59,333 bases of DNA from Octopus bimaculoides (GCF_001194135.2 NC_069001.1:10109264-10168596); one strand, 5' to 3'. Counted from the stretch's first letter, positions 49,341 through 50,372 are shown. The notes: a model not told the origin generated them from the letters alone. A program made the numbers and translations.

Positions 49341-49346
<6 letters not shown>

Positions 49347-50365
49347 ACGTTGGCCACTAAAGTGGACATTTAATGTGCTAGAAATAGACCACATCTTGTG
49401 TCTACTAAGACCTAAATTGTTCTCAAAACGAAATTCAGCGGAATATCAAAGCTTAAGCGGGCAAGACATTTAAAATTACCGAAATAAAACATTATTAAAA
49501 CGCGAACTAGTTTCGAAATTACCACTCTTACCGAATGTCTGTTTCTCTTGAGCGTGATCCGTAATGTAATCATAATTCTCAGAACCCTATACAAAGTTGC
49601 CCACCGCCATAGGTGAACGTGTATATGGTTCCGTTAATTACAACTTGATGGCAACATTCAGAAGTCTTCGTTTTGGCGCGCTAATTCCGGGAATATGTCT
49701 GCAGAAAATAGTTACTGCGTTGCATATAGCCACTTTGAGAACTTGGTTATGGTTAATCAAATCAAAACATAAAGTAAAAATCATATATTAATTAATATCG
49801 ATTTATTACCAGGAAGCTATCACATTAACCATAACCAAGTTCTCAAAGTGGATATATGCAACGCAGTAACTATTTTCTGCAGACATATTCCCGGAATTAG
49901 CGCGCCAAAACGAAGACTTTTGAATTTTGCCATTAAGTTGTAATTAACAGAACCATATACACGTTCACCTATGGCGGTGGGCAACTTTGTATAGGGTTCT
50001 GAGAATTATGATTACGTTACGGATTATGCTGAAGAGAAACAGACATTCGGTAAGAGTGGTAATTTCGAAACTAGTTCGTGTTTTAATAATGTTTTATTTC
50101 GGTAATTTTAAATGTCTTGCCCGCTTAAGCTTTGGTATTCCGCTGAATTTCGTTTTGAGAACAATTTAGGTCTTAGTAGACACAAGATGTGGTCTATTTC
50201 TAGCACATTAAATATCAACTTTAGTGGTCAACGTTATATATAAAAATATACTTTAATCCCCTGAGATCGCAGATATTGTTTCTGAATCTCTTTCATTCTT
50301 TAAACGTGCTAGCTTCCTGGTAATAAATCGATATTAATTAATATATGATTTTTTTACCCTATGTT

Positions 50366-50372
<7 letters not shown>
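49341..50372. repeat. Long foldback A-B-A'-C-B': arms 49341-49757 and 49824-50240; spacer 49758-49823 re-inverted at 50306-50372
   Basis: Manual alignment: 417-bp arms, 14 mismatches, no indels; (TA)n on both outer sides. Confidence 0.95.

What the first reader, a model, noticed from the sequence alone, without database searches (positions are those of the whole stretch)
49341..50372. Near-perfect 417-bp foldback with a permuted A-B-A'-C-B' architecture
Seen: arms 49341-49757 and 49824-50240 have equal length, 14 mismatches and no indels (about 96.6%). The whole 66-bp loop (B) reappears inverted at 50306-50372, after a unique 65-bp segment C. The homolog at 13.9 kb shows that the natural order is A'-C-B'. 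The left part is therefore an inverted copy of a tail-to-head junction (B' joined to A'). Inference: a plain TIR transposon or a single inversion does not give this layout. A tandem, pseudo-LTR or circular intermediate with foldback template switching does. Penelope-like retroelements are known for inverted pseudo-LTRs, so this may be the terminus of an unannotated PLE-like family, or a foldback element that targets (TA)n.
Basis: partly seen in the sequence, partly recalled or inferred. Interest (0 to 1): 0.75.

Follow-up and report, generated by a model that had tools for sequence, protein, structure and literature searches.

The report
Head-to-head repeat copies at (TA)n
The 417-bp palindrome is really in the assembled sequence. 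It is one odd, non-coding copy of a few-hundred-copy repeat that ends in (TA)n, joined head-to-head to an inverted partial copy of itself; this layout is already known for Penelope-like retroelements, and public short reads do not yet confirm the inverted half.

Summary
**Observation.** Arms 49341-49757 and 49824-50240 are 417 nt each, with 14 mismatches and no indels. The 66-nt spacer is an inverted copy of the last ~68 nt of B' (50303-50372). (TA)n lies on both sides.

**What the reads show:**
- A'-tail / TA linker / C / B' is one dispersed, non-coding family of a few hundred copies.
- Coverage rises toward the 3' end.
- About 20-40 longer copies carry the B' end directly upstream of A'.
- The palindrome itself does not recur: no read shows its B-to-A' junction. 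It is a one-off, not a mobile foldback or TIR element.
- The locus has no reverse transcriptase (RT) or GIY-YIG ORF and no hammerhead ribozyme.

**Best reading (about 0.4).** The structure formed during target-primed insertion of a non-autonomous retroelement into (TA)n. Either both strands primed or the cDNA snapped back, and the ends joined at a 3-nt ATT overlap. This is the tandem-plus-inverted layout described for Penelope-like elements, some of which prefer (TA)n.

**Rivals.**
- A short-read assembly error (about 0.3). The left arm's private bases and both loop junctions were not clearly seen in any run, and no long reads are available.
- A later replication template switch (about 0.2).

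Interest is low to moderate.

The parts
49321..49346 (.). Left (TA)13 run, abutting the outer end of the left arm. It is either the insertion target or the microsatellite tail of the inverted copy.
   Evidence: It is preceded by the 3' end of a tRNA-derived SINE (48975-49301) whose other copies are not TA-tailed.
49347..49757 (-). Left arm A, an inverted copy of A'. Its outer end is the 3' end of A' (...CCACTTTAGTGGCCAACGTT) next to (TA)n.
   Evidence: It differs from the right arm at 14 of 417 positions. Four of the differences are CpG<->TpG/CpA changes. Its private bases (49353G, 49502G, 49550G, 49554G, 49729G and others) were not clearly seen in any run.
49758..49826 (-). Loop B, an inverted copy of the last ~68 nt of the B' module, including an AT-rich mini-hairpin. 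Read on the minus strand, B' runs straight into A'.
   Evidence: It is 90% identical to 50303-50372. The core 49774-49826 is high-copy, and most reads continue into the reverse complement of C instead of A'. The private T at 49820 is carried by single-copy-depth 31-mers in the 2015 runs.
49824..49826 (.). ATT overlap at the junction of loop B and the right arm (J3). It belongs both to the B' homology and to the arm.
   Evidence: Sequence reading plus the family continuation ...CACATT|TAAAG seen in reads. No read or contig crosses this junction as assembled.
49824..50235 (+). Right arm A', in direct orientation. It is the body of the long form of the family.
   Evidence: Its private haplotype at 50016-50031 is present as a 75-nt single-copy-depth contig in runs X2 and X8. 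Family depth rises from about 20-40 at 49824 to about 80-145 at 49880 and 400-800 at 50155-50231.
50236..50251 (+). TA-rich linker (ATATATAAAAATATAC) between A' and C. It is longer and different in the 13.9-kb copy.
   Evidence: Family read depth drops by about 35-55% here, which fits variable length and/or many copies ending at the A' end.
50252..50302 (+). Module C.
   Evidence: It is high-copy and contiguous with B' in the family. It is 89% identical to 14039-14075.
50303..50372 (+). Module B', the 3' end of the family unit. It has the hairpin AAATCGATATTAATTAATATATGATTT and a variable last ~25 nt.
50373..50420 (.). Right (TA)24 run, followed by single-copy flank.
   Evidence: The flank 50404-50900 is matched exactly by an 853-nt X2 contig at single-copy depth.
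13942..14155 (+). Second, older, 5'-truncated family member (A' tail-TA-C-B'), followed by (TA)n and an assembly gap.
   Evidence: It is 77-81% identical.
13926..13955 (.). A 14-nt inverted repeat (13 of 14 paired, 2-nt spacer) exactly at the 5' boundary of the second copy. It is a miniature version of the same head-to-head structure.

Best explanation
**What it is**
- The right-hand ~550 bp (A', TA linker, C, B', then (TA)n) is an ordinary member of a dispersed, non-coding repeat family.
- The family has a few hundred copies at 90% identity or more. Its copies are mostly 5'-truncated and end in a TA microsatellite.
- Its longer members carry a second B' directly upstream of A', as a partial tandem.
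- The left arm plus loop is an inverted copy of exactly that upstream stretch (B' end, then A'). It stops at the TA linker and lies head-to-head against the direct copy.

**How it most likely arose (inferred)**
- It formed in a single target-primed reverse-transcription event at a (TA)n site.
- One route: both nicked target strands primed cDNA on family RNA. One primed at the terminal (TA)n and the other at the internal TA linker.
- The other route: the first cDNA snapped back on itself and was later nicked at the TA linker.
- Either way the two ends were sealed at a 3-nt ATT microhomology.

**Comparison with known systems**
- This works like the tandem-plus-inverted insertions of Penelope-like elements, and more loosely like L1 twin priming.

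**Shown versus inferred**
- Shown: the palindrome is a one-off locus structure, not a mobile foldback element, and it has no coding capacity.
- Inferred: the RNA intermediate and the priming steps.
For: 1. **One family.** Depth is continuous at 200-800 reads per run from about 50155 to 50350, against about 1 read per run on the single-copy flank. About 85-90% of loop-core reads continue into the reverse complement of C.
2. **Gradient toward the 3' end.** Depth is about 20-40 at 49824, 80-145 at 49880, about 200 at 50100-50154 and 400-800 at 50155-50231. The window's second copy starts at the equivalent of 50169.
3. **B'-to-A' is natural in long copies.** X1 contig and X2 contig at about 20 times single-copy depth.
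4. **The palindrome is not a family feature.** No read at 49806-49823 continues into A' as assembled.
5. **Boundaries fit priming at TA tracts.** The left arm ends exactly at the A'/TA boundary. (TA)13 and (TA)24 flank the unit. There is a 3-nt overlap at J3.
6. **The arms are real diverged copies.** The transition:transversion ratio is 10:4, and 4 of 14 changes are at CpG.
7. **Other inverted junctions in the family.** A 14-nt head-to-head repeat sits at the 5' end of the 13.9-kb copy. Recurrent 'opposite strands' joints occur in the A' tail in three runs.
8. **Literature.**
   - PLE insertions are 5'-truncated partial tandems, often with an adjacent inverted 5'-truncated copy. Naiads lack hammerheads and prefer (TA)n. 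Non-autonomous forms exist (PMC8557442).
   - A purified PLE protein cleaves and extends both strands at AT-rich (ATT) sites and starts reverse transcription internally on tandem RNA (PMC11167929).
   - Microsatellite-tailed 3' fragments of RTE LINEs form similar families (PMC2887409).
Against: - No RT or endonuclease ORF, hammerhead ribozyme or Pfam domain is present in the locus.
- No partner element is identified, so the RNA intermediate is inferred only from the family's shape.
- Target-site duplications cannot be read inside (TA)n.
- There is no 30-40-bp PLE 'tail'.
- The two 3' ends of the unit differ: the A' end on the left and the B' end on the right.
- The inverted half lacks independent support:
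  - No contig of four 2015 runs covers 49715-49774 or crosses 49821-49829 at 99% identity or more.
  - No raw read of three 2026 runs crosses J3.
  - 0 of 8 reads show G at 49502, and 0 of 6 show G at 49729.
Confidence: 0.4

Rival explanations
1. Assembly artefact. Only the right half (A'-TA-C-B') is really at this locus. While closing a gap, the short-read assembler walked from the left flank into the self-complementary (TA)13 and came out on the opposite strand of a closely related family copy. It ran through A' and its natural upstream neighbour B', and was then joined to the true A' start.
For: - The assembly breaks at (TA)n all over the window: 24 gaps, many directly beside TA runs.
- At 99% identity or more, no contig of four runs from the 2015 sample covers 49715-49774 or crosses 49821-49829. 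The right-arm start is covered at single-copy depth.
- The right arm's private haplotype is present in X2 and X8. The left arm's is in none of X1, X2, X3, X8 or X10.
- Raw reads show no J3 crossing.
- All reads across J2 differ from the window at 49729 and 49763.
- 0 of 8 reads show G at 49502.
- PMC8557442 notes that such repeat structures often garble short-read assemblies.
Against: - The left arm is not a copy of the right arm's reads. There are 14 differences with a natural spectrum, 4 of them at CpG. The arms also share variants absent from the rest of the family (49453/50128, 49652/49929).
- Logan contigs drop minority paths. The right-arm haplotype itself is missing from X10, which comes from the same sample.
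- The raw runs give only about 1x coverage each, come from other animals, and are chimera-rich proximity-type libraries.
- A few reads may carry left-arm states at 49632/49647.
- The loop's private T at 49820 has single-copy k-mer support.
- Palindrome centres are under-represented in Illumina libraries (general knowledge).
Confidence: 0.3
2. Post-insertional DNA rearrangement. A normal long-form copy (…C-B'-A'-TA-C-B') sat here. During replication the nascent (TA)n end paired with the TA linker on the other strand, which is possible because TA repeats are self-complementary. It copied A' and 68 nt of B' backwards, then switched back at ATT. This replaced the upstream part with an inverted duplicate. 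No RNA step is involved.
For: - Both breakpoints lie at microhomology: TA tracts, and ATT at J3.
- The loop is exactly the natural upstream neighbour of A'.
- The 14-nt inverted repeat at 13926-13955 looks like a small template-switch event.
- Template-switch mutations and fold-back inversions are established mechanisms (general knowledge).
Against: - It needs two switches and a pre-existing long-form copy at this site. Only about 20-40 such copies exist.
- It does not by itself explain why head-to-head junctions recur in this family.
- No evidence here separates it from the RNA-based model.
Confidence: 0.2
3. Two independent insertions. An A'-ending copy and a B'-ending copy of the family landed back-to-back in opposite orientations in the same (TA)n tract.
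For: - The family appears to have two kinds of 3' ends. Depth of the A' tail exceeds that of C-B' and drops at the linker.
- (TA)n tracts are plausible hot spots.
Against: - The two copies abut with no intervening target sequence and share a 3-nt overlap.
- They are each other's closest relatives, sharing private variants.
- With a few hundred copies in a genome of gigabase size (genome size is my assumption), exact adjacency by chance is very unlikely.
Confidence: 0.05
4. A mobile foldback or long-TIR element (MITE-like) of about 890 bp with TA target-site duplications.
For: The palindrome 49347-50234 is flanked by TA on both sides.
Against: - Flanking TA is trivial inside TA runs.
- The A-B-A' arrangement is not repeated elsewhere. 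About 20-40 reads per run cover the A' start, and none has the palindrome's J3 junction.
- The inner left arm and left part of the loop are at single-copy depth or below.
- The ends of A' itself are not inverted repeats.
Confidence: 0.02

Closest known systems
Insertion architecture of Penelope-like elements (PLEs: Penelope/Poseidon, Neptune, Naiad) - pseudo-LTR partial tandems with an adjacent inverted 5'-truncated copy
   Same: - Strong 5' truncation.
- A tail-to-head junction in longer copies.
- A head-to-head inverted partial copy forming a long inverted repeat.
- AT-rich or (TA)n target, reported for Naiads.
- No hammerhead ribozyme, as in Naiads.
- Non-autonomous derivatives are known.
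- A PLE protein nicks and extends both strands and starts reverse transcription internally (PMC8557442, PMC11167929).
   Different: - No RT/GIY-YIG ORF at the locus, and no tested sequence link to an autonomous PLE.
- No 30-40-bp tail.
- The unit is only about 0.55 kb.
- Its two outer ends are different points of the unit (A' end versus B' end).
- Naiads are reported as old remnants in cephalopods, whereas this family has many copies at 90-95% identity or more. That the host is a cephalopod is only my inference.
L1 'twin priming' 5' inversions (Ostertag and Kazazian 2001; cited from memory)
   Same: - One retrotransposition event gives an inverted 5' piece joined to a direct 3' piece.
- The second primer anneals internally.
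- The junction shows microhomology.
   Different: Twin priming normally inverts sequence upstream of the direct part, with at most small overlaps. Here the whole 417 bp is present in both orientations, and the internal priming site would be a TA linker.
Microsatellite-associated families made of 5'-truncated, SSR-tailed 3' ends of non-LTR elements (for example RTE in Lepidoptera, PMC2887409) and microsatellite-targeting LINEs (R4/Dong, NeSL/Togen, HERO; PMC4640811)
   Same: - A dispersed, non-coding 3' module with a stem-loop.
- The module is followed by a simple-repeat tail of variable length.
- Many truncated copies.
   Different: - No coding remnant or partner LINE is identified.
- Tandem and inverted junctions are not typical of these families.
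Replication template-switch mutations and fold-back inversions
   Same: - An inverted duplicate next to its source.
- Breakpoints at short microhomology.
- An asymmetric spacer.
   Different: These are DNA-only events with no family tendency. Here several family copies show inverted junctions.

Membership tests
Penelope-like elements (autonomous) | Single ORF with a telomerase-like RT and a GIY-YIG endonuclease | tested here: not met
   No ORF longer than 64 aa lies in 49330-50400. Element ORFs have no Pfam hit. No RT-like ORF was seen in the window's ORF lists; only two ORFs outside the element were scanned against Pfam, and both belong to a mariner remnant.
Penelope-like elements (any, including non-autonomous) | Partial tandem (pseudo-LTR): the 3' end of one unit joined to the 5' part of the next | tested here: met
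   The B' 3' end lies directly upstream of A' on the minus strand of the left half. The same junction is seen in an X1 contig and in an X2 contig at about 20 times single-copy depth.
Penelope-like elements (any) | Adjacent inverted 5'-truncated copy giving an inverted repeat | tested here: inconclusive
   It is present in the assembly. Reads do not confirm it. Smaller inverted junctions occur in other copies.
Penelope-like elements (canonical clades) | Hammerhead ribozyme motif in the pseudo-LTR | tested here: not met
   An Rfam scan of 48000-51500 at E<=1 finds no hammerhead family. Naiad-clade PLEs also lack it (PMC8557442).
Penelope-like elements (any) | Frequent 5' truncation | tested here: met
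   Read depth rises about 20-fold from the A' start to the A' tail. The second window copy is truncated at the equivalent of 50169. The profile is not strictly monotonic.
Penelope-like elements (Naiad/Neptune) | Insertion bias for AT-rich or (TA)n sites | tested here: inconclusive
   (TA)13 and (TA)24 flank this unit, and (TA)n follows the 13.9-kb copy. However, (TA)n occurs about once per 1.2 kb in this window, and the runs could be element tails rather than targets.
Penelope-like elements (any) | Optional 30-40-bp 'tail' extension at one end | tested here: inconclusive
   The last ~25 nt of B' are present in only a minority of copies, with depth falling after about 50344-50354. This was not shown to be a PLE-type tail.
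Penelope-like elements (non-autonomous) | Sequence similarity of the 3' end to an autonomous PLE of the same genome | not testable with these tools
   No eukaryotic genome or repeat library is searchable here.
Non-LTR retrotransposon-derived repeat (SINE or LINE 3' fragment) | Simple-repeat 3' tail and 5' truncation | tested here: met
   (TA)n lies after B' in both window copies, and most contigs show TA-rich sequence after B'.
Non-LTR retrotransposon-derived repeat | Target-site duplications; shared 3' tail with a partner LINE | not testable with these tools
   TSDs are unreadable inside (TA)n. No LINE library is available.
Foldback or long-TIR DNA transposon (MITE) | The same terminal inverted repeats and internal layout in all copies | tested here: not met
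   The J3 junction is absent from all reads, while the A' start is present at about 20-40 copies. The termini of A' are not inverted repeats.
Helitron | 5' TC, 3' CTRR with a GC-rich hairpin about 10 nt upstream, insertion between A and T | tested here: not met
   The unit ends ...GTTTTAATTTT and A' ends ...CCAACGTT. There is no CTRR, and the hairpin is AT-rich and about 25 nt from the end.

The most novel reading that the evidence does not exclude
The family is an undescribed, hammerhead-less, non-autonomous derivative of a Penelope-like element that is or recently was active in this (probably cephalopod) genome and homes to (TA)n. On that reading, this locus is a natural fossil of the 'both strands nicked and extended, internal RT start' reaction so far shown only in vitro for one vertebrate PLE.
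Probability: 0.15. Interest if true: 0.5.

Novelty: new member of a known kind. Interest (0 to 1): 0.3.

Why it matters
- If the structure is real, it is a tidy in-genome example of how target-primed retroelements build long inverted repeats at TA microsatellites. Its breakpoints are readable: the TA linker and an ATT overlap.
- It also points to an uncatalogued non-coding repeat family of a few hundred copies tied to the very abundant (TA)n tracts of this genome.
- It changes no general picture, because tandem-plus-inverted insertions and a (TA)n bias are already described for Penelope-like elements.
- Its practical value is a warning. This kind of locus is where short-read assemblies are least trustworthy, and the inverted half should not be annotated or used (for example as a hairpin-RNA source) before long-read confirmation.

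Tried and rejected
- **Long reads.** No PacBio or Nanopore run is listed.
- **Independent assemblies of the locus.** Four exact-protein look-ups of local ORFs found nothing.
- **Other family copies from metagenome contigs.** Two conserved 30-mers gave no hits.
- **Family sequence in the literature.** No paper holds any of four 15-17-mers.
- **Known RNA families.** Only sub-threshold miRNA-hairpin noise caused by the palindrome and TA runs.
- **Coding capacity.** None.
- **SINE-tail origin of the left (TA)13.** Rejected, because other copies of that SINE are not TA-tailed.
- **TIR, MITE, Helitron and mobile-foldback readings.** Rejected on the termini and on the absence of the palindrome junction from reads.
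- **Foldback priming at (TA)n after a break.** Rejected, because it would put TA at the centre of the palindrome, not at its outer ends.
- **Contig-based absence of the left-arm haplotype.** First taken as strong evidence of an artefact, then downgraded. The right-arm haplotype is also missing from one run of the same sample, and the two arms form bubbles that contig builders pop.
- **Palindromic 30-mer in loose ends.** AGGTTCGTCCATCGATCGATGGACGAACCT was set aside as a probable library linker of the 2026 runs.

Full report
**1. The observation**

- The inverted repeat is in the window as described.
  - The repeat finder gives arms 49331-49757 and 49824-50250: 427 nt including part of a TA run, 96% complementary, 66 nt apart.
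  - A direct comparison gives 417 nt per arm, 14 mismatches (10 transitions, 4 transversions) and no indels.
- The spacer 49758-49826 matches 50303-50372 in inverted orientation, at 89-90% identity with one 2-nt gap.
- Window 13942-14155 carries the last ~60 nt of A', a TA-rich linker, C and B' in that order, at 77-81% identity.
- It is the only inverted repeat of complex sequence of 60 nt or more in the window.
- As single-stranded DNA it folds at -482 kcal/mol, against -86 +/- 5 for shuffles.
- Two details need correcting.
  - C is not unique.
  - The B' homology of the spacer reaches 49826, overlapping the right arm by ATT.

**2. Setting**

- The window is an AT-rich animal genome in a short-read scaffold.
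  - It has 24 N gaps and 50 (TA)n runs of 8 or more units. Many gaps sit directly beside TA runs.
- A tRNA-derived SINE (48975-49301; other copies at 2871-3045, 11959-12103 and 46694-46993) ends just left of the element. That SINE is not TA-tailed elsewhere.
- No ORF longer than 64 aa lies in the element, and none has a Pfam match.
- The only recognisable coding remnant in the window is a mariner transposase piece at 22039-22350.
- Rfam finds no hammerhead or other family at E<=1.
- The organism's name is coded. From the SINE motifs I suspect a cephalopod, but that rests on memory, not on a test.

**3. What the pieces are, from public reads**

On the single-copy right flank, the raw runs give about one read of depth each. 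Raw depth is therefore roughly copy number.

a. *One family.* At 90% identity or more, depth runs continuously at 200-800 from about 50155 to about 50350, across the A' tail, the TA linker, C and B'. These segments are one dispersed family of a few hundred copies.

b. *The spacer is a truncated inverted B'.* The spacer core 49774-49826 is equally high-copy. About 85-90% of its reads continue past 49826 with TAAAGAATCAAAGAGATTCAGAAACAATAT, the reverse complement of C. C-B' is thus the natural contiguous unit.

c. *Rising depth along A'.* Depth is about 20-40 at 49824, 80-145 at about 49880, about 200 at 50100-50154 and 400-800 in the last 80 nt. This pattern is expected for 5'-truncated copies. 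The profile at 95% identity is uneven.

d. *What lies upstream of A' in other copies.*
   - Reads that cover the A' start match from exactly 49824 and do not continue into the spacer as assembled.
   - In an X1 contig the 30 nt before 49824 are the B' 3' end in direct orientation: 21 of 23 identical to the window's B' end.
   - An X2 contig across that junction has about 20 times single-copy depth.
- So in the ~20-40 long copies, B' lies directly upstream of A'.

e. *The palindrome is a one-off.* Its own junction (spacer to A', J3) is not repeated anywhere.

**4. Is the inverted half real?** This could not be settled.

Against:
- At 99% identity or more, contigs of four runs of the 2015 sample leave 49715-49774 and 49821-49829 uncovered. 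They cover the right-arm start at single-copy depth.
- The right arm's private haplotype (50016-50031) appears as a 75-nt contig at depth 27-29 in X2 and X8. The left arm's haplotype appears in none of five contig sets.
- In three raw runs, no read crosses J3.
- All six reads at 49729 and all five at 49763 differ from the window.
- 0 of 8 reads show G at 49502.

For:
- The 14 differences have a natural spectrum, 4 of them CpG<->TpG/CpA.
- The arms share variants that the rest of the family lacks. The left arm is therefore a genuine close paralogue, not noise.
- The spacer's private T at 49820 has single-copy k-mer support.
- A few raw reads may carry left-arm states at 49632/49647.

Limits of the evidence:
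- Contigs drop minority paths. The right-arm haplotype itself is missing from X10, a run of the same sample.
- The raw runs come from other animals, give about 1x coverage each, and are rich in chimeric reads.
- No long-read run is listed.

I put the chance that the palindrome exists as assembled at roughly 55-70%.

**5. Mechanism**

The facts to explain are:
- head-to-head orientation, with both outer ends at TA tracts;
- a left arm that stops exactly at the A'/TA-linker boundary;
- a spacer that is the natural upstream neighbour of A', present once and inverted;
- a 3-nt ATT overlap at J3;
- a family that is 5'-truncated, TA-tailed and non-coding;
- further inverted junctions in other copies, namely the 14-nt repeat at 13926-13955 and recurrent opposite-strand joints in the A' tail.

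A single target-primed reverse-transcription event at (TA)n explains all of these. Two routes are possible:
- *Both strands prime.* One primes on the terminal (TA)n and copies B', C, the linker and A'. The other primes on the internal TA linker and copies A' and 68 nt of the upstream B'. The two cDNAs are then joined at ATT.
- *Snap-back.* The first cDNA snaps back at ATT, copies itself, and is nicked at the TA linker. Unfolding gives exactly (TA)n-A-B-A'-TA-C-B'.

A DNA-only double template switch through the self-complementary TA tracts gives the same product. It cannot be excluded here.

**6. Comparison with known systems**

- The closest description is the insertion architecture of Penelope-like elements (PMC8557442):
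  - strong 5' truncation;
  - partial tandems (pseudo-LTRs);
  - often an inverted 5'-truncated copy at the 5' end;
  - a (TA)n preference and no hammerhead in the Naiad clade;
  - non-autonomous derivatives;
  - frequent trouble in short-read assemblies.
- A purified PLE protein cleaves and extends both DNA strands at AT-rich ATT sites. It starts reverse transcription internally on tandem RNA (PMC11167929).
- Membership is not shown.
  - There is no RT or GIY-YIG ORF and no hammerhead.
  - No 30-40-bp tail was demonstrated.
  - No link to an autonomous element could be tested.
- A LINE partner is equally open. Microsatellite-tailed RTE 3' fragments (PMC2887409) and microsatellite-targeting LINE clades (PMC4640811) are alternatives. 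The Octopus vulgaris repeat survey lists Penelope, RTE, CR1 and Dong-R4 families among recently active elements (PMC13282606).
- TIR, MITE, Helitron and mobile-foldback readings fail on the termini and on the absence of the palindrome junction in reads.

**7. Verdict**

- The sequence observation is confirmed.
- The PLE label is a good analogy but not a demonstrated membership.
- This is a new member of a known kind of structure, or an assembly error.
- Interest is low to moderate (0.3).

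Noticed in passing
window 13926-13955: A 14-nt inverted repeat (TGTCTACTAAAACC / GGTCTTAGTAGACA, 13 of 14 paired, 2-nt spacer) sits exactly at the 5' truncation point of the second family copy. It is a miniature head-to-head structure.
   Followed up: partly
window 21742-22350 (+): Mariner-type transposase remnant. 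The ORF at 22039-22350 matches Pfam Transposase_1 (PF01359) at E = 1.3e-24.
   Followed up: partly
window 48975-49301; also 2871-3045, 11959-12103 (-), 46694-46993: Copies of a tRNA-derived SINE, 65-82% alike. The one at 48975-49301 abuts the left (TA)13 of the element. The other copies have no TA tail.
   Followed up: partly
whole window, for example gaps at 14180, 16484, 29302, 33168, 36332, 37845, 53312: There are 24 N gaps and 50 (TA)n runs of 8 or more units in 59 kb. Many gaps begin or end directly at a TA run, so the assembly systematically breaks at TA microsatellites.
   Followed up: no
loose ends of runs X14-X16 at many window positions (49629-49631, 49814-49819, 49887, 50138, 50234-50236, 50354): The perfect palindrome AGGTTCGTCCATCGATCGATGGACGAACCT follows reads at unrelated positions, but only in the three 2026 'GENOMIC OTHER' libraries. 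It is probably a ligation bridge or linker of a proximity-type library, not genomic sequence.
   Followed up: no
window 49359-49369 and 49730-49736 (mirrored at 49845-49855 and 50212-50222): The two ends of A' carry an inverted motif about 20 nt in from each terminus: AAAGTGGACAT near the 3' end and AAAGTGGATAT near the 5' end when both are read inward. It could be chance or a subterminal structure.
   Followed up: no
window 49436-49775: RNA-run contigs of the same organism hold at most 16% of the sampled words of the low-copy arm segment. A run labelled as a second organism (B) holds 22%, so related sequence exists in another species.
   Followed up: no
window 43417-43770 and 44622-44938: Long low-complexity inverted matches (about 300 nt, 72-75% complementary) made of TA/CA-type simple repeats, including a 122-nt (TA)n run at 44660-44781.
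   Followed up: no
left arm versus right arm, 14 differing positions: At nine positions the left arm's letter is absent, or not clearly present, in the right arm and the family reads, and every one is G or C (49353G, 49502G, 49550G, 49554G, 49632C, 49647G, 49655C, 49661G, 49729G). Nine of the 14 left-arm letters are G. Two of them preserve a CpG that the right arm has lost. The bias is otherwise unexplained.
   Followed up: partly
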